IMG/VR virus record: IMGVR_UViG_3300049215_000771
Span: 248,001 to 312,000 of that record
Length of the DNA: 64,000 nt
Reading direction: 5' to 3' (one strand)
The notes below the pieces were generated by a model, which saw only the letters and a list, made by a program, of their open reading frames with translations, did no database searches and was not told the DNA's origin. The position numbers were made by a program, and so were the translations under genes. Below, piece by piece: positions 23,401-58,506 of this stretch (position 1 is its first letter; every line of letters starts with the position of its first letter).

Positions 23401-26400
23401 GTGATGCTCCGGGCGAAAAAATCATGGAACACAAAGAAGAGTTCAGGGTGTGGTTCAAAAACATCGCCATCTTCATGCGTGACGCCATTGTGAACCCAAT
23501 CTTGGACGAACTGCCGGATGTCAAGTCGGTATTGATGGCTGCTCGTTTGATGCGTGCCATGAGTGTTGTGATCTCGTCGATCCCTCGTGTCATCCTGGGT
23601 ATGGCCAATGGCCTGATGCCGTTGGTTGATAGTGGTATGACCTTGAGAGACACGCCTGCTGACAAGATCAACGACAGCAAGGATGAGTTCAAAGAATGGT
23701 TCCGCCAGGTTGCCATTTTCATGCGTGATGGCATTGTGGCTCCAATCTTGGAAGAACTGCCGGATGTTAAAAGCATCTTGATGGCGGCTAGGATTCTGCG
23801 TGCCATGAGCATCGTCGTCAGTGGCGTTGCTGCAATCATCAAGAATATCTCCAAGGTATTTGGAACCCTGAAGCCAAGCGAGTGCATCAATGACTCCCCT
23901 ATGAGCATGATAGCCGCAGCCGCACCGATCTTCGCTGATTGGTTCATGACTTTGACCGACTTCTTGGTTGGCGGAATCATTGATCCGATTTTGCTCTACT
24001 TCCCAAACAAGGAAGAAGTAGCTGTCGTTGTGGATGCGTTGCGACAGATGATTAACGTCATTCGGTTGCTGCCTGCATTCCTTAACGAACTGTCGGCTGA
24101 AATTGCACCAATGATTGACGGAAGCTGGATGCGGGCCTCACCGATCTCCCGAATTGCATCAGGAGTCATCATCTTTGGCGCTTGGTTCGGTGCGCTCGCC
24201 AATGCCCTGATTGTGGGAATCATCAACCCGATCAAGAATGAGTTCCCGAAGCCTGAAGAAATTGGGCAGATGTTTAACTCCATGCAGACCATGAATGGCT
24301 TGCTGGCAAGTATGCCGGAATTCCTGGAAGACCTGGGCGACCAGATGTCGAAGATTTACGACTCCCCAATATGGGATGAAGGCATGAAGATGCAGGTCAC
24401 TGTTTTCTCAGCCTACTTCAAACACATCTCAGATGCGTTGGTGAAGGGTATCGTAACTCCGGTCGAGGCGTGGCCGAAGAGCGCTATGCTCCAGGAAATG
24501 GTTGCCCGACTGCGTGCAATGTCTGATGCTGTGAAAGCTGTCGCTGAAGTCCTCGAAACCTTCTCCAACAAGTTGGGACCGTTGGTTAATGGATATTGGT
24601 GGTACAGCCCGGAATTGTCAGACCTGAGCCGTAGGGTTGGAAGATTCTCCACCTACTTCACAGGCATTGCTCTATCTTTGCGTGATGGTATCATCAAGCC
24701 GATCCAAGATAACTTCCCAGCAGCGACCGAGTTGCAGGAAATTGTAACAAGGGTAACTGCCCTGAACGATGTCATCCACAACCTCAGCGGTGCTATGACG
24801 GAATTGGCGGCAACAATCGCAGAATTGAATGCCATCAATATGCCAGACCTGGACCCGGAAGTGCTGGGAAGAATTGCTGGTATATTGAACAGACTTGCCC
24901 TCCCGCCAGCAATGGCTCCAGTACAAACTGTTTCGTTCTCGAACCCTGAAGTTTCTTTTGATCCGAACCAGTTCGCACCACCTGAAATTCAACTGGCAGC
25001 ACCAGAAGTTCAGCCTGCATCCTTCCAGATGCCGGATGCACAAGTATTAACACCACCTGCTGCACCACAAGTACAAATGCCAACGCCACAAGCGTTGACG
25101 CCCCCGGCTGCACCACAGTTGCAAATGCCGATGCCACAAGTTCAGCCTGCATCCTTCCAGGTGCCGGGAAGTTCCTTCCAGATGCCAGCACCACAGGTGT
25201 TGACACCACCTGCTGCACCACAAGTACAGATGCCAGCACCACAGGTGTTGACACCACCTGCTGCACCACAAGTACAGATGCCAGCACCGCAGGCACAAAT
25301 ACCGGCTGCACCACAGTTGCAAATGCCAACGCCGCAGGTTCGGCCAGCATCTTTCCAGATGCCAGCACCACAAGCATTGACACCACCCGCAGCCCCACAG
25401 TTGCAAATGCCAACGCCGCAGGTTCGGCCAGCATCTTTCCAGATGCCAGCACCACAAGCATTGACACCACCCGCAGCCCCACAGTTGCAAATGCCGACTC
25501 CACAGGTGCGGCCAGCAGCACCACTACAGTTGCCGAGGCCACAAGCCCAGCAGCCGCAGATGCCGCAGCAAGTGCAGAACTTGCAGATTCCGCAGGTACA
25601 ACAGGTAACAATGCCACAAGTGCAGCAGTTGCAGATTCCGCAGCTTCAAAACTTGCAGATTCCGCAAGTACAACAGTTGCAGATTCCACAGGCACAACAA
25701 GTGCAAGTTCCTCCTGTCCCAGCAATACCTTCACCGGCGCAGTTGCAACAAGCTGGAGCCACGGTTCGTCCGCCAACCATCACCCAGGCAAACATCGGAG
25801 CAAATGCTGGTGCGGCTGGCGCTGGTGCGCTGGGCGGAACTCCGACACCAACACCGGCAGCCCCAGCAACGCCGGCAACCCCAACACCACCGACACCAAG
25901 GGCACCAGCACAAGGAAGACCAGCAACAGGAAGACCAGCAACAGGAAGACCAGCAGCGATGCCGGGTATGCCAATGCCTCCTGCGCCTGCTGCCCCTGCG
26001 ACCCCAGCCCCGACAGGCAACTGGTTCTCTCGCTTGATGCCAAGTTGGATGGGTGGAACGCCGACGCCAGCACCAGCAGCAACGCCGGCAACCCCAACAC
26101 CACCGACACCAAGGGCACCAACTCCAGGAAGACCAGCACAAGGAAGGCCGGCAACAGGAAGACCAGCAACACCAGCAGCGATGCCGGGTATGCCAATGCC
26201 TCCTGCGCCTGCTGCCCCAGCAACCCCAGCCCCAACAGGCAACTGGTTCTCTCGTATGTTGCCTAGTTGGATGGGTGGAACGCCAACACCTACAACGCCA
26301 GCAGCGATGCCGGCAACACCAAGACCGCCTGTAAGACCGCCTGTAACAAGGCCGGCTCCCGTACAAGGTACGGCCACACTACAACAAGGACAGATCACCG

Positions 26401-29036: not shown

Positions 29037-30530
29037 ATGTCATCTTGCGAATTTGATTGTCTTGCACAATACCAATGCGGCCAAGTAGAGCAATTGCCGC
29101 CTGGTGCTATTTATGGTCCCTGGGTTCAGATCGGACTTTCAGGAGAAGGTACAAACATCACGGTCGGTAATCATTCCTCCCCACCAGACAACCACGCCTG
29201 CATCAAATCCTTCGAGTACGGATTCTCCGAGGGCGCTGGCATGAAGGTGGAAATTTACGACGAGGAAGGTAGCCGGCTTTCCACCTTCGTCAACCGCATC
29301 AGCAAAACTGTTTGCCAAGCACCAAATGACTACAAGCTGACGGTAAATTTTGGGTGGATCACTGTAGATTGCAATGGAAACACCAACATTATCAGCACCC
29401 AAAATTTCGGCAACACGTTGTACTTCCTCCCACTGAAAATCGAAGTGGCGTTCGAGAACGGCAAGATCAAATACACTATTGAAGGTACAGACCTTCAGGA
29501 CCGCATCTCGGAAACTCGTGTTGAAAACGCCCGTGGGACGGAAGACGCACGAGTGGATTTGAAAACAGCCATTCGTGAACTATTTGCCGATAGCTGTCCA
29601 AAAATTGACGACATTCGATTTACTGACGCCGAACATCCAGATGCGCCAGATGGATGGCACTTCAAAAACAGTGACGGCGGACCAAATGGACCGAGGGCAG
29701 TGTGGACTACAGACCAGCAGAATGCGATGGCGACAACGAGGAAATGGATTTCTCCTTTGCTCACGGAAAACGACAAAGGTGTAATCCTTCAGTGGAAACA
29801 AGATGAGGACCATCCGGTTCTGGTTTTGTTGGAAGACCCAAACCCGGCCCCGGACGAAAACGAAAGCTGCTGCGAGAACAGCATTGGCACCTACATCGTA
29901 AATGGAGGCAACTGCACTCCCGTTCTCGGATTCACACCACAGATCAATTGGGCATTGAGTTCCAACGCCGGCTCCGGTGGTCAGCAGGCGGGTGGCGCAT
30001 CTGCCAACAACCAGCAACAGGTCGGTAGGCCAGACTCCAACATTGAACGTGTTGGTACGCAAACACAATGGCCTGTGAATCAGAACGATAATATGTGGCG
30101 TCCACAAGACTTGATCGTTCACCGGGCACAAGAAGCTAACGCCGCTCACGAAGCCGCCAACCGCTTCCGTGAAGTTCCGCAAAGCATCAACGCCGAGTTG
30201 AAATTGATGGGTGATCCATCCCTAGCCTTCCCATTGGGCGGGTCTGGTTTGGTGGGCAAATCTGTCTCACTCGTCGTCATCAACCCTTTCTACATTCAGG
30301 AATGTGAATGGATCGCTCAACCTCCCTGTAACGAAATGTTGAGCAACAAAAGATGGATGATTATGGGAGCTAATCACCAAATTAGAGAAGGTTCTTACAC
30401 CACAACACTGAAGTTGTTCCTTGCTGTGCCGAACGTGGACCTGGAACCTGGTACGCCGCTTGGTGGACCTGGCTGTGGAAGATTGACCTTCGACAACGAC
30501 CGCAGCGGCGGCAACGACGAGGACAGCTAA
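29037..30530 (+). CDS. Baseplate hub protein (gp27/gpD-like)
   Basis: Between LysM and spike genes; C-terminal AELKLMGDP..WMIMGANHQI..SYTTTLKL. Confidence 0.7.
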   Translation: MSSCEFDCLAQYQCGQVEQLPPGAIYGPWVQIGLSGEGTNITVGNHSSPPDNHACIKSFEYGFSEGAGMKVEIYDEEGSRLSTFVNRISKTVCQAPNDYKLTVNFGWITVDCNGNTNIISTQNFGNTLYFLPLKIEVAFENGKIKYTIEGTDLQDRISETRVENARGTEDARVDLKTAIRELFADSCPKIDDIRFTDAEHPDAPDGWHFKNSDGGPNGPRAVWTTDQQNAMATTRKWISPLLTENDKGVILQWKQDEDHPVLVLLEDPNPAPDENESCCENSIGTYIVNGGNCTPVLGFTPQINWALSSNAGSGGQQAGGASANNQQQVGRPDSNIERVGTQTQWPVNQNDNMWRPQDLIVHRAQEANAAHEAANRFREVPQSINAELKLMGDPSLAFPLGGSGLVGKSVSLVVINPFYIQECEWIAQPPCNEMLSNKRWMIMGANHQIREGSYTTTLKLFLAVPNVDLEPGTPLGGPGCGRLTFDNDRSGGNDEDS

Positions 30531-32731
30531 TGTCAGTAGTAAGCCAACAACAATTCGCCAAACTCGAACAACGACTCAAAGAAATCGAAGTGCGATTCGG
30601 CAACATGCTGTACGATACTCGTGGTGTTGTACAATCAGAATTGAAAGACCGAATGATTGTTCACAGTCAGTCGGAATCTCAATTTGGGTTGTACACCGCC
30701 CTGTGCATCGACACCATTGACATTTGGAAACAAAATCGCATCAGGTTTTTCTGTCCGGCCTTCCACAATCCGAAGCGTCCGATCAAGGAGATGCCCTGGG
30801 CTTACCCTGTTTCCAACATGGGTGGTTTTGACGATTGTGGTTTGACTTGGGTTCCACCTGCTGGTTCAACTGTCTGCATCTTGTTTGAAGCGGGCCAGCG
30901 GTCATCGCCGTTCTACATTGGTACGACCTGGCATCGTAACCGTGGGCCGGGCGGCAACTTGTTTGGCTTCAACATTGACGAATACTACCGAGTTTGGGCT
31001 GGGCATCGTGGCGGCTATTTGGTAGGGCCGGATGACGAATCTCAGGTTTTCCCGCCGTGGAACACAGAAAACTACAACGGATTTGATCTTTCCTCCATCG
31101 TAGATTTCTCCTCCAACCCGGAGGCACAAAAACTAATCACCTATCCAAATATCTACGGCTTCAAAACACCTGAGAAGCACATGATAAAAATGACGGATGG
31201 TGATCCCAAGTGTAATCGACGATGGAAACGATTCGAGATCATGTCCGGTTGTGGCAACTGGATCATGTTGAAAGACGACCACCTTCATTACGCCGGACAG
31301 TGGGCGCATCCACAGTGCGGCGTCAAAGATGGTGAGACTTCCTGCGTACAAGGTGCGTCCAATAGCAGCGAAACCGACATCACCAGACAGCAGGGTTTAT
31401 CTCCTGATGGAACTACTGCGCATGACGTTCCGACTACAAGCGATCCAATCTCGAAACAATTTGCCGATGTAACAAGTTCAACCTTCCAGTCGGCCCCAAA
31501 AACTGAGAATACACCGTGCCAGGGAACGCACAGCAACAGCAGTATCATTGGAGGACATCCAGCAACATCTGCTGATGATTCGCCGTATATAAACTCTCAA
31601 GCCGGCGCTAATCCATTCTTCAAACATCAAAGCGAGTGCCGACCCTATCAGGGACCGGGCACGCCCCAAAACAACAGAATCGACTTACCGCAGTCTGGCA
31701 TTCAGATTATGTCGATTTCCGGCCACACCATTGTTATGGATGATTCAGTAGAAGAACCTTCCGGCGATCCACGTTGGGAACGTGGAATACAACCATTTGA
31801 TTTCGGTTGCAACAATCACTATTCCGGGCGAACGTACTGGAAGTCTGCCACAGGCCACTGCATTGAGATGCGGGATGTAGAAGACCCTCCACACGTCCAA
31901 AACGCTATGTTGCGTGGTGAATTCAACTTCATCAGGCTGCTGACGGCGACTGGCAACAAAATCGAACTAAACGACCACACTGTAGGTGCGCCGAACTGTC
32001 CTGGCTGTCCGCCAAACGTAGCTGGAAACAAGCGTGGCATCATGCTTGCCAGCACAGCGGGTCACACCATCGAGATGCACGACGAACTAAACCAACAGTG
32101 CGGTCCTTGTCGCATGGAAGGTGGCGTACCTGCTCCGATGGCGAACCCAGGAAACGCTTATGTGAGGATTAGGACGGGGTACGGACTGGAGATGATGTAT
32201 CACGACGACAACCGCCAAGACAAAACAGTTCAACAATACATTCAGATTTTCTGTCCGCAGAAAGACAACAAGGTTCGTGGGCCGCACATCATGAGGTTCC
32301 AGGAAGCACCATCTGGACCTGGATTGATTTTCTTGAGGGCTGGCGGAAACTACATCATCATGACCTACGATAACATGATTGAAATCGTAGGAGACATCAA
32401 GAAAAATCCTTCCGACAAGATCGAAATCATCAGCAAATTGAAGCTGGTGTACACCAAGGACTTCTATGTGAACGTAACTGAGAAGTCGCATGTATTTGTG
32501 GCGAAGAATGACATTCTCCTGTTGGCCGGATGTGATTGTTCATCACCGCAGTTCAACGAAATATGCGGTAGCAGTTGCGGCCCATGCGTTGGACCTGTGT
32601 TGGTTTATGTTGGCGGTTGCATCAGGTTGAGCGACCGCATATATGGTTCTTCTTCACTCAGCGCAACACCAGCTAACATCTTCATGTTGGAACCGCTGGT
32701 CAAGTGTCCGCAGGGTGGGGGCTGCGGCTAA
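30530..32731 (+). CDS. Baseplate central spike (gp5/VgrG OB-fold), Cys-rich
   Basis: RIRFFCP..PWAYP..G..WVPPAGSTVCILFEAGQRSSPFYIG OB-fold; repeated S/TGHxIxMxD beta-helix motifs. Confidence 0.8.
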   Translation: MSVVSQQQFAKLEQRLKEIEVRFGNMLYDTRGVVQSELKDRMIVHSQSESQFGLYTALCIDTIDIWKQNRIRFFCPAFHNPKRPIKEMPWAYPVSNMGGFDDCGLTWVPPAGSTVCILFEAGQRSSPFYIGTTWHRNRGPGGNLFGFNIDEYYRVWAGHRGGYLVGPDDESQVFPPWNTENYNGFDLSSIVDFSSNPEAQKLITYPNIYGFKTPEKHMIKMTDGDPKCNRRWKRFEIMSGCGNWIMLKDDHLHYAGQWAHPQCGVKDGETSCVQGASNSSETDITRQQGLSPDGTTAHDVPTTSDPISKQFADVTSSTFQSAPKTENTPCQGTHSNSSIIGGHPATSADDSPYINSQAGANPFFKHQSECRPYQGPGTPQNNRIDLPQSGIQIMSISGHTIVMDDSVEEPSGDPRWERGIQPFDFGCNNHYSGRTYWKSATGHCIEMRDVEDPPHVQNAMLRGEFNFIRLLTATGNKIELNDHTVGAPNCPGCPPNVAGNKRGIMLASTAGHTIEMHDELNQQCGPCRMEGGVPAPMANPGNAYVRIRTGYGLEMMYHDDNRQDKTVQQYIQIFCPQKDNKVRGPHIMRFQEAPSGPGLIFLRAGGNYIIMTYDNMIEIVGDIKKNPSDKIEIISKLKLVYTKDFYVNVTEKSHVFVAKNDILLLAGCDCSSPQFNEICGSSCGPCVGPVLVYVGGCIRLSDRIYGSSSLSATPANIFMLEPLVKCPQGGGCG

Positions 32732-34747: not shown

Positions 34748-37700
34748 ATGGCAACAGTAGCGCCCGATCAAAACCCTCAAGTATTAGACACGGTTCTGTT
34801 CAACCTGCCGACGCCGGATGCCAATGGCTGCTTCCTGGCTGATCCATACATGGTGAACAGCGTTGTGGTCTATTTCGTTGAGAGAGATTTCGCTGATCTG
34901 AATGAAAACCAATATGACAATATCATTCAGGATGACGCCGCCAGTGCTGCCGCTGACGCAGCCGAGGCCGTGGCCTGCGCCAATCCGACTGCCGCCAACA
35001 TTCAACAAGCAAAAACACTTCGGTCACAAGCCAACAGTTTGGCATTCACAAGCCCATTCTACTACAACGATGCCAACCCTGTCACTGTTGTAGGCAATGC
35101 TGATTATCCTGCCTGGCTTACCACAGATCAAAGCAACGCCTTCATCACGCACACTGGCACCGGGCAGTTTCAATATGCCTGGAACAGTTATGGAATGCGT
35201 GAAGGCGACTACTTTGTTTGTTGGACCTGGACGCCCAACCCTGCCGGCGACACCATCTCCAACAGTTTCAAGTTCAATCTGGCTGGCAATTCAGTAGTAA
35301 CAACCAGCATTCCGACGCACTACACACAGCCGGACAAGTATTACACTCTACTGACAACCTACCTGCCGGAAACGTACAAAACACTGATTACTGACACCGA
35401 CCGAACACCAGATGTATTGGACAGGTTCAACCAGGCCGTAGCCCTTGGTTTTACTGCTGTAGAAAACCTAGCCAATCAGATTGTAGACCTTCAGGACGCC
35501 AACAGTACGGCAGAAGCATTCTTGCCCCTTCTGGCCCGTTACTTTGGCATTACCCTGAAAACACAAGACCCAGCACTGTGGAGGCGTCAGATCAAGCAAG
35601 CCATCCCATTGTTCAAGAAGAAGGGAACGATTGGAGGCTTGCAGGAGGCATTGGCTCAGGCTGGAATCAGGATGGCGAAAGTAACCAGGTTGTGGCAGAT
35701 TATTTCTTCATACACTTGGCAGGACGCTTTCACCTATGACGGAACCAATGACACCTGGGAACTTTCCAAGACGCCAGTGATGCCTATTGATCCAACCAAC
35801 TATGCTGTTTACTTGAGGCCAGAAGGACAACCTTCTTACATGCAATTGGGAACAGATTATGTTTCCTTTGGAACTGACATGGACGGCAACCCAACAGTAA
35901 CCTGGGCTGGCAGCGGCCTGATGATCGACCCTATTGACCTTGTTGCTGGCGACATCGTAAAGGTGTTGTATGTTTACAAGTCAGTGCCGGATAGCCCACA
36001 CCAGACCATTGAGAATTATGTGCGCAGCCTGCCATTGGCTGACCAGCGTGACGAAACAAAACAACAATACCCACTAAAAAACTGGAACGTGCGACTCATC
36101 GAGGAGGACGACCCGTTGTTCAATGTGGTCATTCCCGACAAGTTTCCATTCATGGACCCGCTGATCTACGGCAAGGTGCGCACTGAATTCCCGTACTCCG
36201 AGAATGCCTACAACGCCGATGAATACAACGGCAGCATCAGGAATTCCTACAATCCCTGCGACATCGACAAGGACTTCCTCGATCCATGTACGGCCTGCCT
36301 GGGAAGCAAGTTCAATATCGACCTGGAGATCGAGAACTTGTCCAACAATCGCATTCTGGAGGCCCAGGACGTGATATTGGAATTCGTGCCGTTCCACGCC
36401 CAGCTTCAGACCATGAACTTCACTGGCGGGATAACTGAATTTATAACGCCTCCCCTGGAAGAAATTGAGGTTTTGGTGAGTGTTTCGGGCGGTGATTTTG
36501 TGCTTTGCGGCGAGGGACAGATGTGGTTCAACCGTGCCATGAAGGGCGGCTTAACCACCCATATCATCGACCGCTCCATGTTGGCATCGTCGGACATCCC
36601 AATATCAAATCAGGCCGGCACAGCCTACAACGATTACATTACCATCTGGAGTTCCAGTGTTTTGTTCGACAACATAGCCATGTCCACAGATGGTTCGGCT
36701 TTATTGGAAGTTTTTGCACCATCACCAAATGCCGGAACCTACAACCTGAGCAACCCGTCCCGCAACACAGCAGTTGTAACTGGTGCTACGGAACCACTGA
36801 ACACTTCAGCATTTACGTTCAGGCTATCGAACGTCTTGACTTCAGGTACGCTGTGTAACATCTATCAGAACAACTCGGTGACGTTGCTTGATGCGAACAA
36901 TCCGTTCCCTAGTGTTTTGTCCTTGTTTGACGTGACATATAACGGGGCGACGGGACCATATACAGTTTTGATTCCTGCTTACAGCGCCACACATTATCAG
37001 GTGAACAGTGTTTTCCCGGACGGCTCCTTGGAGTTGTTGGATCACGGAGAAACGCTGCCAACATCCAATGTAACCAACGTGGCTTATACCTTGTACGATG
37101 AGAACGGAGCGGTGGTAAGCAGCAGTACGACAGGCGGGTTGACGATAGCAGTACGGGGTCGGGTGCAATCGTTGGATAGTAGCATTCAGGACATCCACAA
37201 CATGATTCGTGGCACCTGTTATGTTGTTACGGGCGGCAGTCAGTATTTGATTGATGGTTTTGTCAGTCCCACTGATGACGCCGAATTCTACATCGACGGG
37301 TACGCAGGCGGGGACATGGCTGGCACGACTTTGACGATTTACCAGCGAATTGTAGACAACGAAATTGGATATTTCAGCCATCGAGGACTGGAGTTGCAGG
37401 TTTCAGGCAACCTGGAAACAACTTTGAACATACAAAATGGTGCAAATCCACCTGCTACGCCGCTAGAAAATAACGACTTCATGGAGAACTACATTGTAAC
37501 AATTAACAGCCAAGATTACTTGATTAGCATGATAAATGGCAACAGCCCACCGGGATACACGACAATTACTTTGGCCGGGCCGGACAATTACTGGAAGACG
37601 TTGGGTGCAGGAGGTACGAGCGTGAATTTCACGGTAACACACTTCACCAAGGAAACGATCACAGTTCCAGGCCAGCAGTTCGATCTACCTGCTCACACCT

Positions 37701-37879
37701 TCCCGACCTATGACCGTGGAGGCCGTGAGGTTATTGACCAGCAAACCAACAACGATCCGCCTGTAGGTGTGTCGATGGTTGGCAAGGGTGCCGGTTTGAC
37801 AGAAGTTGTCGAGCAATCGGAGGGCATTAGTTTTGAAATCGAATGGGCCGATGGCTCGAAGGATCAGGGGAATATATGA
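34748..37879 (+). CDS. Baseplate wedge protein with Tail_P2_I-like domain (gp7-like)
   Basis: FLPLLARYFG..WRRQIKQAIPLFKKKGTIGGL..AL; follows the J gene. Confidence 0.75.
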   Translation: MATVAPDQNPQVLDTVLFNLPTPDANGCFLADPYMVNSVVVYFVERDFADLNENQYDNIIQDDAASAAADAAEAVACANPTAANIQQAKTLRSQANSLAFTSPFYYNDANPVTVVGNADYPAWLTTDQSNAFITHTGTGQFQYAWNSYGMREGDYFVCWTWTPNPAGDTISNSFKFNLAGNSVVTTSIPTHYTQPDKYYTLLTTYLPETYKTLITDTDRTPDVLDRFNQAVALGFTAVENLANQIVDLQDANSTAEAFLPLLARYFGITLKTQDPALWRRQIKQAIPLFKKKGTIGGLQEALAQAGIRMAKVTRLWQIISSYTWQDAFTYDGTNDTWELSKTPVMPIDPTNYAVYLRPEGQPSYMQLGTDYVSFGTDMDGNPTVTWAGSGLMIDPIDLVAGDIVKVLYVYKSVPDSPHQTIENYVRSLPLADQRDETKQQYPLKNWNVRLIEEDDPLFNVVIPDKFPFMDPLIYGKVRTEFPYSENAYNADEYNGSIRNSYNPCDIDKDFLDPCTACLGSKFNIDLEIENLSNNRILEAQDVILEFVPFHAQLQTMNFTGGITEFITPPLEEIEVLVSVSGGDFVLCGEGQMWFNRAMKGGLTTHIIDRSMLASSDIPISNQAGTAYNDYITIWSSSVLFDNIAMSTDGSALLEVFAPSPNAGTYNLSNPSRNTAVVTGATEPLNTSAFTFRLSNVLTSGTLCNIYQNNSVTLLDANNPFPSVLSLFDVTYNGATGPYTVLIPAYSATHYQVNSVFPDGSLELLDHGETLPTSNVTNVAYTLYDENGAVVSSSTTGGLTIAVRGRVQSLDSSIQDIHNMIRGTCYVVTGGSQYLIDGFVSPTDDAEFYIDGYAGGDMAGTTLTIYQRIVDNEIGYFSHRGLELQVSGNLETTLNIQNGANPPATPLENNDFMENYIVTINSQDYLISMINGNSPPGYTTITLAGPDNYWKTLGAGGTSVNFTVTHFTKETITVPGQQFDLPAHTFPTYDRGGREVIDQQTNNDPPVGVSMVGKGAGLTEVVEQSEGISFEIEWADGSKDQGNI

Positions 37880-38355
37880 GAGAAACACATAGCCCGTGTG
37901 AAGTGTACGGCCATGTCCAGGCGATCATCGACTACAAGTCTGGCGAGAGGGCCGTCATTGAGTTTCCGAACACCATTCTTCGCACGGGAAGGAATGCGTT
38001 GGCGGCTTCACTTGCCAATGATGTAGGAGGCCAGTTCAACTTCTATATCTCAAGGATGTTGTTCGGCGACGGCGGCACGGCGGGCGGCGTCGTTAAGTTC
38101 GTAGACACTGCCAGAAACGGGTTGTTTGGTATTACCCGTGCCAACAAGCCAGTTATTGCGCAGGTCGATCCGAACATTCCATCTCAGGTGATTTTCACTT
38201 CTGTCGTCGCCTACAGTGAGGCGAACGGTTACACTTTGAATGAGATGGCGTTGCAGATGAACACAGGGGATTTCTACAGTATGGTGACGTTCCCGGACCT
38301 AACCAAGACAGATCAGATGCAGATTACTTGGAATTGGAGGCTTTCCTTCGTATGA
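37876..38355 (+). CDS. Tail/baseplate fibre-attachment protein
   Basis: NTILRTGR..ISRMLFGDGG..EANG..LNEMAL..KT..ITWNWRL, typical of tail-collar/wedge proteins; ATGA coupling. Confidence 0.6.
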   Translation: MRETHSPCEVYGHVQAIIDYKSGERAVIEFPNTILRTGRNALAASLANDVGGQFNFYISRMLFGDGGTAGGVVKFVDTARNGLFGITRANKPVIAQVDPNIPSQVIFTSVVAYSEANGYTLNEMALQMNTGDFYSMVTFPDLTKTDQMQITWNWRLSFV

Positions 38356-38717
38356 AAAACTACTGGCTCGATAAGAAAAAGAACAACATTCCGACTTGCA
38401 AGGATTTGCAGGAAGCTACTGTTGATTTTCAGAACAACAGGACAACAAAAAACGCCGAGAGGCTATGCGAGATGTTCAAGGTTTTGGTGGAAACCATCTT
38501 GAAGTATTTCGGCGACAAGATCGACCTTGGGGACAGGAAGCAAGTTACTGTCGAGTGCATGGCGACGTGCTTTACCAAACTGAGGCGGTACAATCCACAG
38601 AAGGGGAAGGCGTTCAATTTCTTCACAACAATCATCCTGTCACACATGCGGCAGATATACAGAACGAGGAGGGCTTATGCGGAACTTTTGGCTCGACAAA
38701 ATAACAGAAAAAAGTAA
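38352..38717 (+). CDS. gp55-like sigma-factor region-2 protein with NYWLD leader
   Basis: CFTKLRRYNPQKGKAFNFFTTII matches the region 2.2-2.4 pattern of T4-type late sigma; starts MKNYWLDK. Confidence 0.65.
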   Translation: MKNYWLDKKKNNIPTCKDLQEATVDFQNNRTTKNAERLCEMFKVLVETILKYFGDKIDLGDRKQVTVECMATCFTKLRRYNPQKGKAFNFFTTIILSHMRQIYRTRRAYAELLARQNNRKK

Positions 38718-39084
38718 GGTGCAAACTTGGAACTTCGAGGAAGAACTGAAGAAAATGATGGACAAGGCAGCGATAACTTTGGAGATGCAGTCCGTGAAAG
38801 TCTTGCCGGAACCAAGCTCGACGGAAAACTTGGTGCGCCGTTGGAAGAGAATGGAAATCACTTCCCAATGCGGGCACAGTTGGTTCTTCGCCGACGAGAA
38901 TGCAAGCTGCGGCGCATGGGCGAAGCTGGTGGAGCGGCCCGATTATGGGGTTCCATTGCCGCAGGCATCCGTAAAGCAACAAGATGATGTGCTTCCACCC
39001 TGGAACACTGAAACCTACAACGGAATCGACCTGGAGAATACCGAAGAATTTACGCCGACAAACGGCTGGGAGTGCGATCTATGA
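38677..39084 (+). CDS. Mini-protein carrying spike-derived segments with NFWLD leader
   Basis: GAGGAGGG RBS; RRWKRMEITSQCG and PPWNTETYNGIDL match segments of the 30530 spike. Confidence 0.75.
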   Translation: MRNFWLDKITEKSKVQTWNFEEELKKMMDKAAITLEMQSVKVLPEPSSTENLVRRWKRMEITSQCGHSWFFADENASCGAWAKLVERPDYGVPLPQASVKQQDDVLPPWNTETYNGIDLENTEEFTPTNGWECDL

Positions 39085-39632
39085 AGAACTACTGGTTAGA
39101 CAGGAAAAAAAAGAAAGATTGCTACTGCGACAAATCCGACGAGGGAATGAGGAGGCGGGCAAAGTTGCAGACTGAGTACATGCGGCGTCGGATAGAACGC
39201 CTGCGAAACTTCACCAGGGCTTTGGCCACGGGCGGCTCGGTGGAGATCAATTGGGAAGCCATTGAGAAGGAGGAGCAGGAAGAAAAAATCAAGTTCGAGA
39301 TTCCTGAAATTCCGACCCCTGAAATTCCGCCAATCACAGTAATGTGGGACTTCAACACCCCGCCGCCTGAAATCAACATCCCGCCGATGGTATTCGGGAC
39401 CATCGACATCACTGGTACTGGAATAATGACTCAGATCGACATTTCGCCACCCGTCAATATACCGACTGAGATCAAACTGGTTGCTCCAGACCCGATGCCT
39501 GTCATCAAGGTGGAATGGGGTCTACCGCCTACCATTCCTTTGATAATCACGGATACGTCCGGGCCGATGGGGACCATGCCGTTGGACATTCCCAGCGTGA
39601 TTACGATAAACTCGCCGGAATACCGTATATAA
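39081..39632 (+). CDS. Mini-protein resembling the flanks of the 2048-aa fibre, with NYWLD leader
   Basis: ATGA coupling; NIPPMVF, PPVNIPTEI and VEWGLPPT match fibre NLPPIVF, PPINIPSEI and VNWGPAPT. Confidence 0.7.
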   Translation: MKNYWLDRKKKKDCYCDKSDEGMRRRAKLQTEYMRRRIERLRNFTRALATGGSVEINWEAIEKEEQEEKIKFEIPEIPTPEIPPITVMWDFNTPPPEINIPPMVFGTIDITGTGIMTQIDISPPVNIPTEIKLVAPDPMPVIKVEWGLPPTIPLIITDTSGPMGTMPLDIPSVITINSPEYRI

Positions 39633-39636
39633 CGAT

Positions 39637-40461
39637 ATGCCAGAACTTGATCTGTATCCAGTACCACTGTATAATCCACTGCACCCGTACCATTGGGAGT
39701 ACGACAACCTGCCGTTGCAGAATTTAATCCTTCGGGATGAAATCATCAACGGCCAGGTTGACTACAACTCAGGCATCTTGATGGATGCCGCTGGTACACA
39801 GGGCACATTGGCAAATCGGCTTGCGCAAAGCATCGACCCCAACGGCAGTCTCTTACTTGCCGCCGTCGATTCCGTGATGCACAACATAGCCGCTCACATT
39901 GACGGAACAGCCAATCTGTCTCCAACTGAGATTTCTTCTTTGGCGACACTTGGGTATGTTGTATCGAATCCAGTCCCGTATGTGAGAATGTTGAACGCAG
40001 AACGGGCCAAGCTATCCCTTATTGCTGATGAAGCAACGAACATGACGATTCAGGTGCAAACACCTTCTGTCACTGTTCTGTACACCCAGGGACCGATTAC
40101 CTTTGTTCCATCCGAAACAGTAACATGGTTCGTTTCAGGTAATCAGATACAGGCCAATTTGGGGTTCCCGATTGAAGCAGCACATCGTCACTACTACGAT
40201 CAGGAACCAGTAACGAGCGATTATCAGAACTATCAAACAACGTCGGTCAGCACACCATGTAGGGTGGGCACATTGCGAGTGTACATCAACGGCGTAAGAC
40301 TCAGTGAAACAGCAAACGTCTACGTTCCCTCAGCCATCATCTCGGCCCCGTGGACGCTGAACTCCTTCACGCCAAACGAAGAAGCTGGAACTTTCCAACT
40401 GGAAACTCCCATTACCGCCGCTGACATCATTCGCATCGACTTCGACATTGCTTTGACATAA
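39637..40461 (+). CDS. Tail/baseplate structural protein
   Basis: Beta-rich ORF in the tail operon; C-terminal LRVYINGVRL domain common in tail proteins. Confidence 0.6.
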   Translation: MPELDLYPVPLYNPLHPYHWEYDNLPLQNLILRDEIINGQVDYNSGILMDAAGTQGTLANRLAQSIDPNGSLLLAAVDSVMHNIAAHIDGTANLSPTEISSLATLGYVVSNPVPYVRMLNAERAKLSLIADEATNMTIQVQTPSVTVLYTQGPITFVPSETVTWFVSGNQIQANLGFPIEAAHRHYYDQEPVTSDYQNYQTTSVSTPCRVGTLRVYINGVRLSETANVYVPSAIISAPWTLNSFTPNEEAGTFQLETPITAADIIRIDFDIALT

Positions 40462-45648: not shown

Positions 45649-48600
45649 ATGGCTAATGGCTTTCCTCCAGTTCCGGTTTACCCTGCGGGGTACGATAGTG
45701 ACAAAACTCTGTATTTGGTTTACAACACAGCAGAAACAGTCACCACCCGTGATAATGCGCCCTGGTCTGAATTCATTCACATCAAACCAGTTGATTCCGA
45801 TGCAGATGAAATTTGGGCCAGCAATGGCTTCGCCAATATCGAAGGCGAACTGTTCTACTACGACGCCGTAGGTTACGACGAATTTGGCAAAGTAAACGTC
45901 CTGAAGCGATGCGCCAGGAACCTGGGCGGCTCGCACACTGTATGGAACCCGCAAGGCTCCGACGTTCGTGGTTTCGTCATTGCCGAACACCACAACCAAC
46001 TCGTGGAGGCCATTCTAAACACCCAGGGCTTCATTGGCTACAACTTCACGAATGACTGCTCCACACTTGACTGGAGGATTCGCCATCTCCAGGCTTTGCC
46101 GATCATCGACGATGATTCCAACTGCCCCACAATCGTTCTTGATGTACAAGTCATTAGCCAAGACCCAGCCCAGGGCACCGTCATCCAGTATGCCATTCTC
46201 ATCAATGGCCCATACACTGGATTCCGCCTGGATTTCGGTGACGGAGATTTTACAACCACAGCTACCAACGGATACCACCAATACGCCGCCAATGCGACCA
46301 TCGACCCAATCGTAACCATCGTCAACTCCAACTGCTCGGTAGTAACTTCGCCAATTCAGCGTACTATCGCCACTGAACCTGCGGTCGGGTCTGCTTTGAC
46401 GCCATTTGAAGTTACAATCCCAACGATACCTTCACTACCCCCAATTATTTTCCCGAACGTAATTCCACCATCGAACGCTTTCAACCTGCCGCCAATTGTG
46501 TTCCCGTGCTTGAACATTGGACCTATTGGCCCAATCAACATACCTTCTATCATCACTGTTGAACCACCGATCAACATACCTTCGGAGATTTTCATCACGC
46601 CGGTCACAATCCCGACCGAGATCACGATCACCCCAATCACGATCCCGACCGAGGTTGTCATCACCCCGATCACGATCCCAACACACATAACGATCTCGCC
46701 GGTTACGATCCCGACGCTGATTACTATCACGCCGGTTACGATCAGCCCAATTGACATTCCGACGTTAATCGTCATCACGCCGGTCAGCATCCCGACCGAA
46801 ATCGTCATCACGCCGGTCAGCATCCCGACCGAAATCGTCATCACGCCGGTCAGCATCCCGACATTGATTACGATTACGCCGGTCAACATCCCGAACGTCA
46901 TTACGATCACTCCGATCACAATCCCGAACATCAGGATCACACCGATCTCGATCCCGAACATCACGATCTCGCCGGTCAGCATCCCGACCGTTATCACGAT
47001 CACGCCGGTAACGATCCCGACTCAGATCACGTTCGGGCCAGTGACGATTCCGACTGCGATCACAATTACACCAGTGACGATTCCGACTGCAATCACAATT
47101 ACACCAGTCACAATCCCGACGACAATTACCATCACGCCGGTCAATATCCCGACGAACATTACCATTACGCCGGTCAATATCCCGACACAGATCACGTTCG
47201 GGCCAGTAACGATCCCGACACAGATCACGTTCGGGCCAGTAACGATCCCGACACAGATCACGTTCGGGCCAGTGACGATCCCGACTCAGATCACGATCAC
47301 TCCGATCACGATCCCGAACATCAGGATCACGCCGATCTCGATCCCGAACATCACGATCTCGCCGGTCAGCATCCCGACAACAATCACCATTACGCCGGTC
47401 AACATCCCGACAGTGATAACGATCACGCCGTTCCCGTGCAAAATTCCATCGCAGATCACGATCACTCCGGTCACGATCCCGACGAACATCACTATTACAC
47501 CAATTTCGATACCGAACATCAACATTTCACCGATTTCGATACCGACAAAGATCACAATTACACCAGTCACGATCCCGACGACAATTACCATCACGCCGGT
47601 CAATATCCCGACGAACATCACCATCACGCCGGTTGATATTCCGACGAACATCACCATCACGCCGGTCGCAATCCCGACGAACATCACGATTACGCCGGTC
47701 AACATCCCGACGTTGATTACCATTACGCCGGTCAACATCCCGACAACAATCACCATTACACCAGTGACGATCCCGACTCAGATCACGTTCGGGCCAGTGA
47801 CGATCCCGACTCAGATCACGATCACTCCGATCACGATCCCGAACATCAGGATCACGCCGATCTCGATCCCGAACATCACGATCTCGCCGGTCAGCATCCC
47901 GACAACAATCACCATTACGCCGGTCAACATCCCGACAGTGATAACGATCTCGCCGGTCAACATCCCGACAAACATAACGATCTCGCCGGTTACAATACCG
48001 ACTAACATCACCATTACACCTGTCACGATACCGACGAAGATCACCATTACGCCGGTTGACATCCCGACGAACATCACGATTACGCCGGTCAACATCCCGA
48101 CGTTGATTACCATTACGCCGGTCAACATCCCGACTCAGATCACGTTCGGGCCAGTGACAATCCCGACTCAGATCACGTTCGGACCAGTGACGATCCCGAC
48201 TCAGATCACGATCACTCCGATCACGATCCCGAACATCAGGATCACTCCGATCACGATCCCGAACATCACGATTACGCCGGTCAACATCCCGACGTTGATT
48301 ACCATCACGCCTGCCAACATCCCGACGAACATCACCATCACGCCGGTCAACATCCCGACAAACATCACCATTACGCCGGTTACAATACCGACTAACATCA
48401 CCATTACGCCGGTTACAATACCGACGAAGATCACCATCACTCCGGTCACGATCCCGACAGTGATAACGATCACTCCGGTCACGATCCCGACAGTGATAAC
48501 GATCACTCCGGTCACGATCCCGACAGTGATAACGATCACACCAGTTGACATCCCGACTGCAATCACGATCACTCCGGTTACAATCCCGACGAACATCACC

Positions 48601-51600
48601 ATTACGCCGGTAACGATTCCGACAACGATTACGATTACTCCAGTCACGATTCCGACAAAAATCACCATTACGCCGGTCAACATCCCGACGAACATCACCA
48701 TTACGCCGGTTACAATACCGACGAACATCACTATTACGCCGGTCAACATCCCGACGTTGATTACCATTACGCCGGTCACGATCCCGACGACAATTACCAT
48801 CACGCCGGTCACGATCCCGACAACAATCACCATTACGCCGGTCAACATCCCGACGTTGATTACCATTACGCCGGTCAACATCCCGACGTTGATTACCATT
48901 ACGCCGGTCACGATCCCGACTCAGATCACGTTCGGGCCAGTAACGATCCCGACTCAGATCACGTTCGGGCCAGTGACGATTCCGACTAAGATCACGATTA
49001 CACCGATCACGATTCCGGCAATCAGGATCACGCCGATCTCGATCCCGAATATCACGATTTCACCTGTAAACATCCCGACGACAATTACCATCACGCCGGT
49101 CAACATCCCGACAGCGATCACGATCACGCCAGTTGATATTCCGACAGCGATCACGATCACGCCAGTTGATATTCCGACAGCGATCACGATCACGCCAGTC
49201 AACATCCCAACGAACATCACCATTACGCCGGTCACGATACCGACAGCGATTACCATTACGCCGGTCACGATACCGACAAAGATTACCATTACGCCGGTCA
49301 ACATCCCGACGTTGATTGCGATCACGCCGGTCAACATCCCGACAAACATCACCATCACACCAGTTACGATCCCGACACGAATCACAATCACGCCGGTCAC
49401 GATCCCAACAGCGATCACGATCACGCCGGTCACGATCCCGACGACAATTACCATCACGCCGGTCAACATCCCAACAGCAATCACGATCACGCCGGTCAAC
49501 ATCCCGACTCAGATCACGTTCGGGCCAGTGACGATCCCGACTCAGATCACGTTCGGGCCGGTTACAATTCCGACCAAGATCACGATCACTCCGGTAACGA
49601 TCCCAAACATCAGGATCACACCGATCTCGATCCCGAACATCACGATTACTCCAGTTGATATTCCGACAGCGATCACGATCACGCCGGTCAACATCCCGAC
49701 AGCGATCACCATCACTCCAGTTGATATTCCAACAGCGATCACCATCACGCCGGTCAACATCCCGACAGCGATCACCATCACGCCGGTCAACATCCCGACA
49801 GCGATCACCATCACGCCGGTCACGATCCCGACGTTGATTACCATTACCCCTGTGATAATCCCGACGTTAATTACAATTACGCCGGTCACGATACCGACAA
49901 AAATCACCATCACGCCGGTCGCAATCCCGACGAACATCACCATTACACCGATCACGATCCCGACAGCGATCACTATTACGCCGGTTGATATTCCGACAGC
50001 GATCACTATTACGCCGGTCAACATCCCGACAGCGATCACTATTACGCCGGTCAACATCCCGACAGCGATCACGATCACGCCGGTCACGATCCCAACAGCG
50101 ATCACGATCACGCCGGTCAACATCCCGACAACAATCACCATTACGCCGGTCAACATCCCGACGTTGATTACCATTACACCAATTACAATCCCAACACAAA
50201 TTACGTTCGGACCAGTGACGATCCCGACTCAAATTACGTTCGGGCCAGTGACGATTCCGACTAAGATCACGATCACACCGATCACGATTCCGGCAATCAG
50301 GATCACGCCGATCTCGATCCCAAACATCATGATCTCGCCGATCTCGATACCGACAGTGATTACGATCTCGCCGGTCAATATCCCGACAGCGATCACGATC
50401 ACTCCAGTTGATATTCCGACAGCGATCACGATCACGCCAGTTGATATTCCGACAGCGATCACGATCACGCCGGTCACGATCCCAACAGCGATTACCATTA
50501 CGCCGGTCACGATCCCGACAGCGATTACCATTACGCCGGTCACGATACCGACAGCAATCACCATTACGCCGGTCAACATCCCGACGAGTATCACGATCAC
50601 GCCGATCACGATTCCTGCAATCACGATCACGCCGATCTCAATCCCGAATATCAACATTACGCCGATCTCGATCCCAGCGATCACGATCACACCGATCTCG
50701 ATCCCAGCGATCACGATCACACCGATCTCGATCCCAGCGATCACGATCACACCGATCTCGATTCCGAATGTGAACATCACGCCGATCACGATCCCAAATG
50801 TGAACATCACACCGATCTCGATCCCGGACATTAACATCACGCCGATCACGATCCCAAATGTGAACATCACACCGATCTCGATCCCGGACATTAACATCAC
50901 GCCGATCACGATTCCTGCAATCACGATCACGCCGATCTCGATTCCAGCAATCACGATCACACCGATCTCGATTCCGAATGTGAACATCACGCCGATCTCG
51001 ATACCGGACATCAATATCACGCCGATCACGATTCCTGCAATCACGATCACGCCGATCACGATCCCGGACATCAACATCACGCCGGTCACAATCCCGGACA
51101 TCAACGTGAATTGGGGACCAGCGCCAACAGTTACCTGCACGGTAACGGTGTCGTGTCCTTCTTCGCCGTCAACGACGCCATCTATGGGGTTCCTGGCGGG
51201 TGGGGTAGCTTTGCCGAGCGACTTCCAGGATGGCTTCTCACCGATTGAGGGAACGGTAGAGACAAGTGACATTGGCATTCCAACTGAAATTCAGTTGGTT
51301 GTGCCTGAAATCCCGGACATCCGAGTGATTCACGACATCCCGGCCATGATTGAGGTTGTGGCCCCGAAGATTCCGCCGATTGAGATCACGGGCTGGCAGA
51401 ACATCCCGAAGACCATCGAGGTCATTGCCACGGACATCCCGAAGACCATCGAGGTTGTGGGAGCGCACGCTATTCCGAAGTCGATCTCGATTGAGGGGGC
51501 GTCGAACATCCCAACCGTCATCAGGCTAGAAGTGCCTGTGGACTTCCCGAAGACGATTGTGCTGGACGCCAGCGGCATCCCGGACAAGATTCAAGTTGTC

Positions 51601-58041: not shown

Positions 58042-58506
58042 ATGAAGAAGAATCAAAAATGCGTCAGCGACCTTGGTGCCGCTGCATACATCCTCATGCA
58101 CGAATACAAAGTCATAGGTCGCCGTGGAAAGGAAATTTTTTTCCTCGTCGATGATGACGAACACAACAACGAGAAGTTTGACGAGTTGACACTCGACTAC
58201 CTCTCCAGTGAGTTCCATCGCTTCGACTCGTGTATCATGTCGTTAAAAAAAATCGGCGAGTACCCATTCGACCAGAAAAAACACCGATTTGTAACAGACC
58301 TGGGAGCCGCCGCATACATCCTCATGCACGGTTACAGGGTTGTTGGGAAGAAAGGCAAAGCAATTTACTTCGAGGTTGTTGAAGAAGAAACTGCCGACAA
58401 GTTTGATGAAGTTGCGCTGGAATACCTGTCCAGCGATTTCCACAGATTCGATTCCTGCCTGATGTCTCTCAAAAAGATCGGTGAATATATCAGCGAGCAG
58501 AACTAA
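58042..58506 (+). CDS. Protein with two tandem DUF5659-like domains
   Basis: Two copies of DLGAAAYILMH..FDE..L.YLSS.FHRFDSC.MSLKKIGEY. Confidence 0.6.
   Translation: MKKNQKCVSDLGAAAYILMHEYKVIGRRGKEIFFLVDDDEHNNEKFDELTLDYLSSEFHRFDSCIMSLKKIGEYPFDQKKHRFVTDLGAAAYILMHGYRVVGKKGKAIYFEVVEEETADKFDEVALEYLSSDFHRFDSCLMSLKKIGEYISEQN

What the first reader, a model, noticed from the sequence alone, without database searches (positions are those of the whole stretch)
38677..39084. Mini-protein carrying two spike segments in swapped order, conserved at protein level
Seen: RRWKRMEITSQCG (38836-38874) matches spike RRWKRFEIMSGCG (31217-31255) at 10/13. PPWNTETYNGIDL (38995-39033) matches spike PPWNTENYNGFDL (31052-31090) at 11/13. 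The order in the mini-gene is the reverse of that in the spike. Of the identical residues, 7/10 and 5/11 codons differ silently. Inference: this is not a fresh DNA duplication; the two peptides are under purifying selection and probably form one contiguous surface or interface in the folded spike, so the ORF looks like a structural mimic.
Basis: partly seen in the sequence, partly recalled or inferred. Interest (0 to 1): 0.78.

Follow-up and report, generated by a model that had tools for sequence, protein, structure and literature searches.

The report
Mosaic mini-protein of capsid and spike pieces
This small gene of a 533-kb phage is real and conserved, and it belongs to an apparently undescribed family of mini-proteins stitched together, in any order, from short conserved pieces of the phage's own capsid and tail-spike proteins, so the "swapped order" is one case of general piece-shuffling; what the proteins do is still unknown.

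Summary
The 135-aa ORF (38677-39084) shares two short peptides with the central spike (30530-32731) in reversed order, at exactly the stated identities and silent-codon counts. The ORF is neither a fresh duplicate nor a spike-paralogue fragment. It is a conserved small gene in a variable slot of the baseplate/fibre operon of a moss-metagenome huge phage with a T4-type capsid.

A profile search found 59 hits, mostly small proteins, sharing an N-terminal leader (MKNYWLDKK). Most then carry a helix copied from the gp23-like capsid protein (residues 318-345), followed by 0-4 spike modules in any order and number. Module A is PPWNTE.YNG. The other modules are beta-hairpin units.

In the window's copy the capsid module has decayed, a middle stretch is ambiguous, and spike modules C and A are kept. 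Synonymous sites are saturated while the peptides are retained, so the gene is selected as a protein. At least seven other small ORFs in the genome carry single capsid fragments.

My best reading (confidence about 0.4) is that the modules are portable docking peptides. They would imitate assembly-interface segments of the parent proteins and so bind the spike, the capsid protein or a shared partner. Binding is not shown.

The parts
38677..39084 (+). Mini-protein gene (135 aa). It is a mosaic of leader, capsid-derived helix, spike module C, an ambiguous middle stretch, spike module A and a GWECDL tail.
   Evidence: ORF with a GAGGAGG Shine-Dalgarno 5 nt upstream. Syntenic orthologues of 87-159 aa in L005, L019, L110 and the P0004 contig.
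38677..38703 (+). Shared N-terminal leader MRNFWLDKI (family consensus MKN[YF]WL[DE][KR]K).
   Evidence: The same leader starts three consecutive genes here (38352, 38677, 39081) and occurs nowhere else in the 533-kb genome. Its codons differ synonymously.
38707..38811 (+). Decayed copy of the major-capsid-protein helix (MCP residues about 311-345, WDF..LG.TI.EKYE.LYVKV).
   Evidence: hhalign of family alignment A1 against the genome's gp23-like MCP: probability 97.3%, E=2.7e-11. The window copy alone is not significant by BLASTP. It is intact in orthologues P0002, P0005 and the L110 gene.
38836..38919 (+). Spike module C (RRWKRMEITSQCGHSWFFADENASCGAW), matching spike hairpin 2 and the following AGQW loop.
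38920..38979 (+). Ambiguous middle stretch (..ERPDYGVPLPQASVKQ). In the family alignment it sits where P0005 and the L110 gene have an intact module B (YPKIYGFKTPEKH). In pairwise BLASTP it aligns with spike 259-274.
38980..39054 (+). Spike module A (QDDVLPPWNTETYNGIDLENTEEFT).
   Evidence: BLASTP E=1e-7 against spike 170-194. PPWNT is invariant in 15 of 15 mini modules and in 119 spike homologues.
39064..39084 (+). Conserved C-terminal GWECDL plus the stop codon, overlapping the ATG of the next gene (CTATGA).
   Evidence: The same junction occurs in L005, L019 and L110. The GWECDL codons vary synonymously while CTATGA is fixed.
30530..32731 (+). Central spike (733 aa, gp5/VgrG type), the parent of modules A, B and C.
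   Evidence: Pfam Phage_base_V OB domain at residues 86-134, E=4.2e-8. AF2 model shows an OB fold followed by a long run of beta-hairpins. The best Foldseek hits are weak and are to eCIS, VgrG, P1 and T4 gp5 spikes. Flanked by a probable gp27-like hub gene (assigned by position only; no family hit) and a gp25 gene.
31037..31111 (+). Spike segment A (residues 170-194, PPWNTENYNGFDL).
   Evidence: P175, P176, W177, N178, T179, E180, Y182, G184 and D186 are invariant in 43 homologues. pLDDT is below 50 in the monomer model.
31139..31207 (+). Spike segment B (residues 204-226, YPNIYGFKTPEKHMIKMTDGDP), the first beta-hairpin.
   Evidence: Strands 207-212 and 218-223. Near-invariant.
31217..31351 (+). 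Spike segment C (residues 230-274, RRWKRFEIMSGCGNWIMLKDD..AGQW), the second beta-hairpin plus a loop.
   Evidence: Strands 233-238 and 244-248..
38352..38717 (+). Gene a (121 aa): the leader plus a truncated sigma-70 region-2-like domain. It overlaps the mini start by 41 nt.
   Evidence: 39% identical over residues 14-115 to a 179-aa paralogue at G000:C1:413516-413815(-) that passes the Pfam Sigma70_r2 cut-off. Weak sigma hits in NCBIfam and among ESM Atlas neighbours.
39081..39632 (+). Gene d (183 aa): the leader plus repeats resembling those of the 2048-aa protein at 45649-51795.
   Evidence: P0162 fuses spike modules G-A-B-C to a gene-d-like tail at the same genomic position.

Best explanation
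What is shown. The ORF is a genuine gene selected at protein level. It belongs to a family of small mosaic proteins found in one lineage of huge phages with a T4-type capsid. Members share a roughly 10-aa N-terminal leader. Most then carry a helix copied from the gp23-like major capsid protein (residues 318-345). After that come zero to four short modules copied from the most conserved part of the gp5/VgrG-like central spike: a linker motif, PPWNTE.YNG, and individual beta-hairpin units of the spike needle. The modules occur in any order and number, and they are gained, lost or decay independently. The genes sit in a variable slot between a tail-collar-fibre gene and a conserved 274-aa gene, usually chained by overlapping stop and start codons. 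What is inferred about function. Each module acts as a self-contained docking peptide that imitates an assembly-interface segment of its parent protein. The mini-protein shows no confident fold on its own. It would therefore bind unassembled spike subunits, and in relatives capsid subunits, or whatever partner those segments normally contact. That would make it a chaperone, cap or regulator of trimer or capsomer assembly, comparable to a eukaryotic microProtein or a fibre-assembly chaperone. The shared leader would be a common handle, and being repeated it would also allow cassette gain and loss by recombination.
For: Reality of the gene and selection on it. Orthologues at 27-47% identity keep the ORF, leader, PPWNT core and GWECDL end. 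Between orthologues pS is 0.73-0.77, which is saturated, against pN of 0.33-0.37, and pN is 0.18-0.26 in the A plus C-terminal region. Module against parent gives pS 0.86 and pN 0.13. Mini A-modules share L and T where all spikes have F and N, so they descend from a common mini ancestor rather than being re-copied from the spike. Mosaic nature. The profile search gave 59 hits, and module maps show capsid and spike pieces in many different orders. Capsid origin. Pfam Gp23 E=6.6e-86 for the parent and hhalign probability 97.3%. Interface character of the modules. Spike residues 172-258 are the most invariant part of the protein. B and C are the first two hairpins of the needle, and A is an invariant segment that the monomer model cannot place. 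Minis keep the first strand and the turn of each hairpin. No confident fold. AF2 pLDDT 48.8 and ESM Atlas pLDDT 0.34. Context. The slot lies after a fibre gene, holds 1-4 leader genes in five loci, and has translationally coupled genes. In relatives, modules are also fused to unrelated domains such as MORN-like repeats and Zn-ribbons, as expected of address or docking tags. Short contigs 100% identical to the 3' half of the gene occur in three metatranscriptome runs.
Against: No binding has been shown. The only complex prediction gave no answer. The low-confidence fold may simply reflect a 6-sequence alignment. The capsid module has decayed in the window's copy, so that part is not under strict mimicry here. 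A protein that carries both capsid and spike modules has no obvious single assembly role. One leader-bearing neighbour is a sigma-like protein, which does not fit a purely structural function. The spike motifs are conserved in hundreds of phages whereas the profile search found only 59 mini-family hits, so the spike evidently does not need the minis. The RNA-library contigs could be DNA carry-over.
Confidence: 0.4

Rival explanations
1. The mini-protein folds so that peptides A and C reconstitute one contiguous surface or interface patch of the spike, making it a folded structural mimic of that patch.
For: Both peptides are conserved with the spike in the window's copy and in P0002, P0003, P0005 and the L110 gene. 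The spacing between them is similar in the two proteins (53 vs 55 residues).
Against: Homologues carry A without C, C without A, or the two in either order and with other modules in between. No fold is predicted. In the spike model, hairpin B lies between A and C.
Confidence: 0.07
2. Decoy or sponge. The mosaic displays the most conserved peptides of late proteins (capsid, spike, sigma) in order to soak up host, prophage or satellite factors that recognise or inhibit those segments.
For: The modules are exactly the invariant segments an innate sensor or inhibitor would target. Order does not matter and copy number varies, as expected for a poly-epitope. The genome also holds separate small ORFs that tile the conserved core of the capsid protein. 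One covers the region aligning with T4 gp23* residues 20-72, which contains the Gol peptide (the Gol position is from my own knowledge). Bacterial sensors of core phage proteins are widespread (PMC13581612).
Against: No sensor or inhibitor is known for these segments. A free epitope could trigger a sensor rather than block it. The gene sits in a late structural operon rather than among early anti-defence genes. No hit in PHROGs, Pfam or NCBIfam. The PADLOC defence library was not searched.
Confidence: 0.15
3. Virion cargo. The shared leader is a targeting signal, like the capsid-targeting sequence of the T4 internal proteins, that loads these variable small proteins into the particle or tail for delivery into the host.
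For: A cluster of small, variable genes shares a roughly 10-aa N-terminal peptide that is conserved at amino-acid rather than nucleotide level. Thirty-one other small ORFs in the genome share a different conserved end tag, KKYRSIDDPW, which suggests that sorting tags are used generally in this phage.
Against: No protease site follows the leader. One leader-bearing protein is sigma-like. There are no proteomic data. This view does not explain why the cargo consists of pieces of capsid and spike.
Confidence: 0.15
4. Evolutionary debris. The ORF is a non-functional patchwork left by illegitimate recombination among late genes and is open only by chance.
For: The slot is highly variable, with 1-4 genes. 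The capsid module, and possibly module B, have decayed in the window's copy. Low dN/dS against the parent could in principle be inherited from a donor phage's full-length gene.
Against: The ORF, its start codon and Shine-Dalgarno, the leader, the PPWNT core and the C-terminal motif are all kept in orthologues whose synonymous sites are saturated. Mini-specific substitutions are shared across phages. There are 59 hits at E<=1e-3, and in every member examined the modules lie in frame within an open reading frame.
Confidence: 0.07
5. Autonomous mini-spike. The hairpin modules let the protein trimerise on its own into a short beta-helix, for example as an alternative tip or plug.
For: Modules B, C, D, F and G are all the same kind of hairpin unit (h.h.S..GH.h.h.D) and could stack in any order.
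Against: The window's copy has only one clear hairpin. Many members have none. There is no PAAR or tip-protein signature. No fold is predicted.
Confidence: 0.05

Closest known systems
T4 gp5 / Mu gp45 / P2 gpV / T6SS VgrG central spikes
   Same: The parent protein is of this type: an OB domain (Pfam Phage_base_V) followed by a needle of beta-hairpin repeats, encoded between a probable hub gene and a gp25 gene. The mini shares one or two hairpin units and a linker motif with it.
   Different: The mini has no OB domain, has at most two repeat units, is 135 aa long, and also carries a capsid-derived module and a leader. It is not a spike paralogue.
T4 gp23 major capsid protein and its Gol peptide
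   Same: The family's N-domain is copied from a gp23-type capsid protein (helix 318-345). T4 shows that a short gp23 peptide (Gol) can act on its own by binding EF-Tu (from my own knowledge). One separate small ORF of this genome covers the Gol-equivalent region.
   Different: The module in the mini family is a different part of the capsid protein, probably an A-domain helix. It has decayed in the window's copy, and no partner is known.
T4 internal proteins (IPI-III and Alt) with a shared capsid-targeting sequence
   Same: A variable cluster of small genes that all begin with the same roughly 10-residue peptide.
   Different: There the leader ends in a prohead-protease site and the bodies are unrelated proteins. 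Here no cleavage site is evident and the bodies are pieces of the phage's own structural proteins.
Eukaryotic microProteins (for example LITTLE ZIPPER and Id proteins)
   Same: Small proteins derived from part of a larger oligomeric protein, thought to act by pairing with the parent's interaction surface.
   Different: MicroProteins copy one folded interaction domain of one parent. These minis string together peptides of about 13-35 aa from at least two unrelated parents in shuffled order. Binding has not been demonstrated.
Tail-fibre assembly chaperones (Tfa, gp38, gp57A) and intramolecular chaperone domains of trimeric fibres
   Same: Small, variable genes lying directly after a fibre gene, with a proposed role in assembling trimeric beta-structures.
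   Different: There is no sequence or profile similarity to any chaperone family, and the known chaperones are not built from copies of their client's sequence.

Membership tests
gp5/VgrG-type central spike (as a paralogue or fragment) | N-terminal OB-fold domain (Pfam Phage_base_V) | tested here: not met
   No Pfam hit for the mini at E<=0.1, while the spike scores 4.2e-8.
gp5/VgrG-type central spike (as a paralogue or fragment) | Collinear similarity to a full-length spike, with homologues that are full-length spikes | tested here: not met
   The segments are in reversed order. Syntenic orthologues are 87-159 aa small proteins. Full-length spikes appear in the profile search only through their A and C segments.
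PAAR / gp5.4 spike-tip proteins | PAAR-repeat domain | tested here: not met
   No hit in Pfam, PHROGs or NCBIfam.
T4-type internal proteins with a capsid-targeting sequence | Shared N-terminal peptide of about 10 aa in a cluster of small variable genes | tested here: met
   The leader starts 3 genes in the window, 4 in L005, 3 in L110 and 1 each in L111 and L112.
T4-type internal proteins with a capsid-targeting sequence | Prohead-protease cleavage site after the leader, and presence in the virion | not testable with these tools
   No conserved L/I-x-E motif is evident after the leader in alignments A1 and A3. No proteomics exist for this uncultured phage.
microProtein-type interface mimic | Small protein homologous to part of a larger oligomeric protein and lacking its other domains | tested here: met
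microProtein-type interface mimic | Physically pairs with the parent protein | tested here: inconclusive
   Complex prediction (three copies of spike 80-300 plus the mini) returned 'no answer'.
Tail-fibre assembly chaperones | Profile match to a known chaperone family (for example Caudo_TAP or gp38) | tested here: not met
   No family hit. Only the position after a fibre gene agrees.
gp23-family major capsid protein | Full HK97-type gp23 domain | tested here: not met
   Only about 35 residues align, at family-profile level. The true MCP is the 478-aa protein at G000:C1:338843-340279.

The most novel reading that the evidence does not exclude
These huge phages maintain a library of end-tagged 'fragment proteins'. 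These are small ORFs that copy, tile and shuffle the invariant peptides of their own late machinery: the capsid protein, the spike, a giant fibre-like protein and the late sigma factor. Each carries one of two conserved end tags, the MKNYWLDKK leader or the KKYRSIDDPW tail. On this reading they form a previously unrecognised, protein-level system of self-mimicry used to control assembly or late gene expression, or to neutralise host or satellite factors that target those invariant peptides.
Probability: 0.3. Interest if true: 0.85.

Novelty: new variant of a known kind. Interest (0 to 1): 0.72.

Why it matters
If the modules really are portable docking peptides, these proteins mark, by natural selection, which short segments of a phage spike and capsid protein are sufficient for recognition or assembly. 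That would give a ready-made map of assembly interfaces and a possible toolkit of tags for loading cargo onto virions. It would also extend the microProtein idea to viruses. It would give a function to some of the many small ORFs of huge phages, which are mostly unexplained. If the decoy reading is right instead, it would show a new form of counter-defence against sensors of conserved phage proteins.

Tried and rejected
- Spike-paralogue fragment: rejected, because the orthologues are small syntenic genes.
- Recent duplication: rejected, because nucleotide identity is 64-79% and synonymous sites are saturated.
- Recurrent gene conversion from the cognate spike: rejected, because minis of different phages share substitutions that no spike has.
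- Intein or homing-site link: spike inteins in relatives are inserted after residue 434, between modules E and F and away from A, B and C.
- GWECDL and the leader as a purely nucleotide-level junction element: rejected, because their codons vary synonymously and each occurs without the other.
- Promoter and terminator scans, and a search for the T4 late promoter TATAAATA near the slot: nothing above chance.
- Pfam, PHROGs, NCBIfam and ESM Atlas for the mini-protein, and a PDB profile search with the spike alignment: no hits.
- Complex prediction: no answer, so it is not used as evidence either way.
- AF2 of the mini alone: low confidence.
- Metagenome contig scan: only one extra locus.
- IMG/VR scan with the leader-plus-helix profile: returned mostly true capsid genes.
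- Phage GenBank collection: the family is absent. The 595-kb phage LR756511.1 has a related spike without PPWNT and has no spike-fragment ORF.
- Literature full-text search for the motif strings and for capsid-fragment, decoy and microProtein terms: nothing relevant.

Full report
**Source.** The window is bases 248001-312000 of a 532,729-bp virus record. Its DNA is held by moss-metagenome runs. The genome has a T4 gp23-type major capsid protein (Pfam Gp23, E=6.6e-86). Its nearest GenBank phage relative is the 595-kb uncultured phage LR756511.1, whose spike is 44.5% identical.

Around the finding lies a contractile-tail baseplate operon. It runs: a 4553-aa ORF, two small genes, a 497-aa probable hub (assigned by position; no family hit), the 733-aa spike (Phage_base_V OB domain), gp25, a 525-aa gene, a 1043-aa Tail_P2_I protein, a 170-aa tail-collar-fibre-like protein, three small genes including the finding, and then a 274-aa gene.

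**Checking the observation.**
- BLASTP between the two proteins gives E=1e-7 for the PPWNT segment and E=1e-5 for the RRWKR segment, in reversed order.
- Neither motif occurs anywhere else in the six-frame translation of the genome.
- For the two cores together, the proportion of synonymous differences is 0.86 and of non-synonymous differences 0.13.

This is an old, protein-level resemblance.

**What the gene is.** The word-based search found five relatives and a profile search found 59 hits at E<=1e-3.
- Syntenic orthologues occur in the same slot in related phages. They are 90 aa in the P0004 contig, 87 aa in L005 and 159 aa in L110.
- The alignment keeps an N-terminal leader, M[KR]N[YF]WL[DE][KR], the core LPPWNT, and a C-terminal GW[ED]CDL. 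The RRWKR segment is simply absent from the short orthologues.
- P0005 and the L110 orthologue also carry YPKIYG[FW]KTP.KH. So three spike segments that run A-B-C in the spike run C-B-A in these minis.

**Shuffling is general.** Mapping every family member onto this phage's spike and capsid protein gives many architectures.
- Spike modules alone: leader then A; C; C-B; A-B; B-C-G; G-A-B-C.
- Larger mosaics: a repeat, then E-F-B-C; and C, a capsid piece, D, A, A, B.
- Modules fused to unrelated domains such as MORN-like repeats or Zn-ribbons.

Nearly every leader-bearing member has, just after the leader, a copy of capsid-protein residues 318-345 (WDF.TALG.TI.EKYE.LYVKV), at up to 89% identity. 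The family profile aligns to this genome's capsid protein with hhalign probability 97.3%, E=2.7e-11. In the window's own copy that module has decayed below pairwise detection.

The finding is therefore a mosaic: leader, decayed capsid helix, spike hairpin C, an ambiguous stretch, spike motif A, and the GWECDL tail.

**What the modules are in the parent.** In an alignment of 43 spikes, residues 172-258 are the most invariant stretch.
- The AF2 monomer model has mean pLDDT 64.6. It shows the OB fold (strands 54-132), a low-confidence linker 154-195 that contains A, and then regular beta-hairpins. B is 207-212/218-223 and C is 233-238/244-248, with further hairpins as far as about residue 603.
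- Foldseek gives only weak matches. The best are to eCIS, VgrG, P1 and T4 gp5 spikes, and to single-layer beta-sheets, which is what one chain of a trimeric needle looks like on its own.
- The minis preserve mainly the first strand and the turn of each hairpin, and PPWNT in all 15 of 15 A modules.
- Mini A-modules from different phages share L and T where all spikes have F and N. They therefore descend from a common mini ancestor rather than being re-copied from the spike.

**Selection and expression.** Between mini orthologues, synonymous sites are saturated (pS 0.73-0.77) while pN is 0.33-0.37, and 0.18-0.26 in the A plus C-terminal part. The gene has a strong Shine-Dalgarno sequence, and its stop codon overlaps the next start. 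Short contigs 100% identical to its 3' half occur in three metatranscriptome runs, while the upstream 1.5 kb has none. This is weak evidence only, because DNA carry-over was not excluded.

**Wider pattern in the same genome.**
- The three consecutive slot genes all start with the leader. The first is a truncated paralogue of the genome's gp55-like small sigma factor. The third carries repeats of the 2048-aa protein encoded downstream.
- Elsewhere, at least seven dispersed small ORFs each carry one fragment of the capsid protein. They correspond to MCP residues 1-58, 55-102, 218-310, 307-432, 318-368, 400-448 and 438-463, at up to 88% amino-acid identity but only 71% nucleotide identity.
- Five of these seven end in a second conserved tag, KK.YRSIDDPW. 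That tag closes 29 of the 31 small ORFs in the genome that carry it, again with varying codons.

**Mechanism.** The comparative data rule out a single folded copy of one spike surface. They point instead to independent peptide modules. The modules are interface-type segments of oligomeric virion proteins. The protein has no confident fold of its own. It also sits in a fibre and baseplate operon.

For these reasons I consider docking by self-mimicry the most likely mode of action, with confidence about 0.4. On this reading each module binds where, or to what, the parent segment binds. The mini-protein would then act as an assembly chaperone, cap or regulator. No binding has been demonstrated, and the one complex prediction gave no answer.

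The rivals are a decoy against sensors or inhibitors of conserved late proteins, leader-directed virion cargo, recombination debris, and a self-trimerising mini-spike. Each is listed with its own test in the rival explanations.

**Novelty.** No family library, solved structure, GenBank phage or paper I could search contains this family or its motifs. The nearest concepts are eukaryotic microProteins, the leader-sharing T4 internal proteins, and fibre chaperones. A mosaic of shuffled peptides taken from both capsid and spike appears to be new.

Noticed in passing
window 38352-38717, 38677-39084, 39081-39632: Three consecutive genes begin with the same peptide, M[KR]N[YF]WLD[KR]K, encoded with different codons. 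The slot they occupy holds 1-4 such genes in related phages (L005, L110, L111, L112).
   Followed up: yes
window 38352-38717; paralogue at G000:C1:413516-413815 (-): The first slot gene is a shortened paralogue (39% identity) of a 179-aa protein that passes the Pfam Sigma70_r2 cut-off. That protein's N-terminus resembles T4 gp55 as I recall it from memory. This makes the slot gene a candidate truncated late sigma factor inside a baseplate operon.
   Followed up: partly
G000:C1, 31 sites outside the window (for example 58150-58437, 351043-351617, 517817-518781): Thirty-one small ORFs carry the motif [KR][KR].[YWF]RSIDD[PDE]W, and in 29 of them it lies within 19 residues of the stop codon. Codons vary. 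The bodies are diverse and include membrane helices, Zn-ribbons and capsid fragments. Internal copies of the leader in fused relatives are preceded by the same KKY[RK], so the two tags may be related. Function unknown.
   Followed up: partly
G000:C1 58150-58437, 351357-351617, 453411-453812, 475461-475757(-), 517817-518062, 518216-518509, 524328-524810: Seven dispersed small ORFs each carry one fragment of the gp23-like capsid protein. Together they tile residues 1-102 and 218-463 but not 103-217. One (58150-58437) covers the region aligning with T4 gp23* residues 20-72, which contains the Gol peptide (the Gol position is from my own knowledge). Another is the capsid propeptide fused to a Zn-ribbon.
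   Followed up: partly
window 39081-39632 and 45649-51795: The third slot gene consists of the leader plus proline-rich IP..I repeats. These are 32-38% identical to the many internal repeats of the 2048-aa protein encoded 6 kb downstream, which has no Pfam hit.
   Followed up: partly
window 14499-28160: A 4553-aa ORF lies directly upstream of the baseplate genes. It is rich in predicted membrane-like hydrophobic repeats and has long Pro/Gln/Thr repeat arrays. It has no Pfam hit. Its position suggests a giant tape-measure-like protein. Many long antisense ORFs over it are probably artefacts of the repeats.
   Followed up: partly
relatives P0034, P0036, P0049, P0063 (spikes); L111 12151-13086 and 20615-21778: Some spike homologues carry a roughly 372-aa intein with a homing endonuclease, inserted after the residue equivalent to spike 434. 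In L111 the gp25 homologue carries an intein, and an IS605 OrfB/TnpB-like gene sits just after the slot.
   Followed up: partly
window 38868-40333: Short contigs identical to this stretch occur in moss and plant metatranscriptome libraries, while 36500-38000 has none. This hints that the slot genes and the 274-aa gene are transcribed in the environment.
   Followed up: partly
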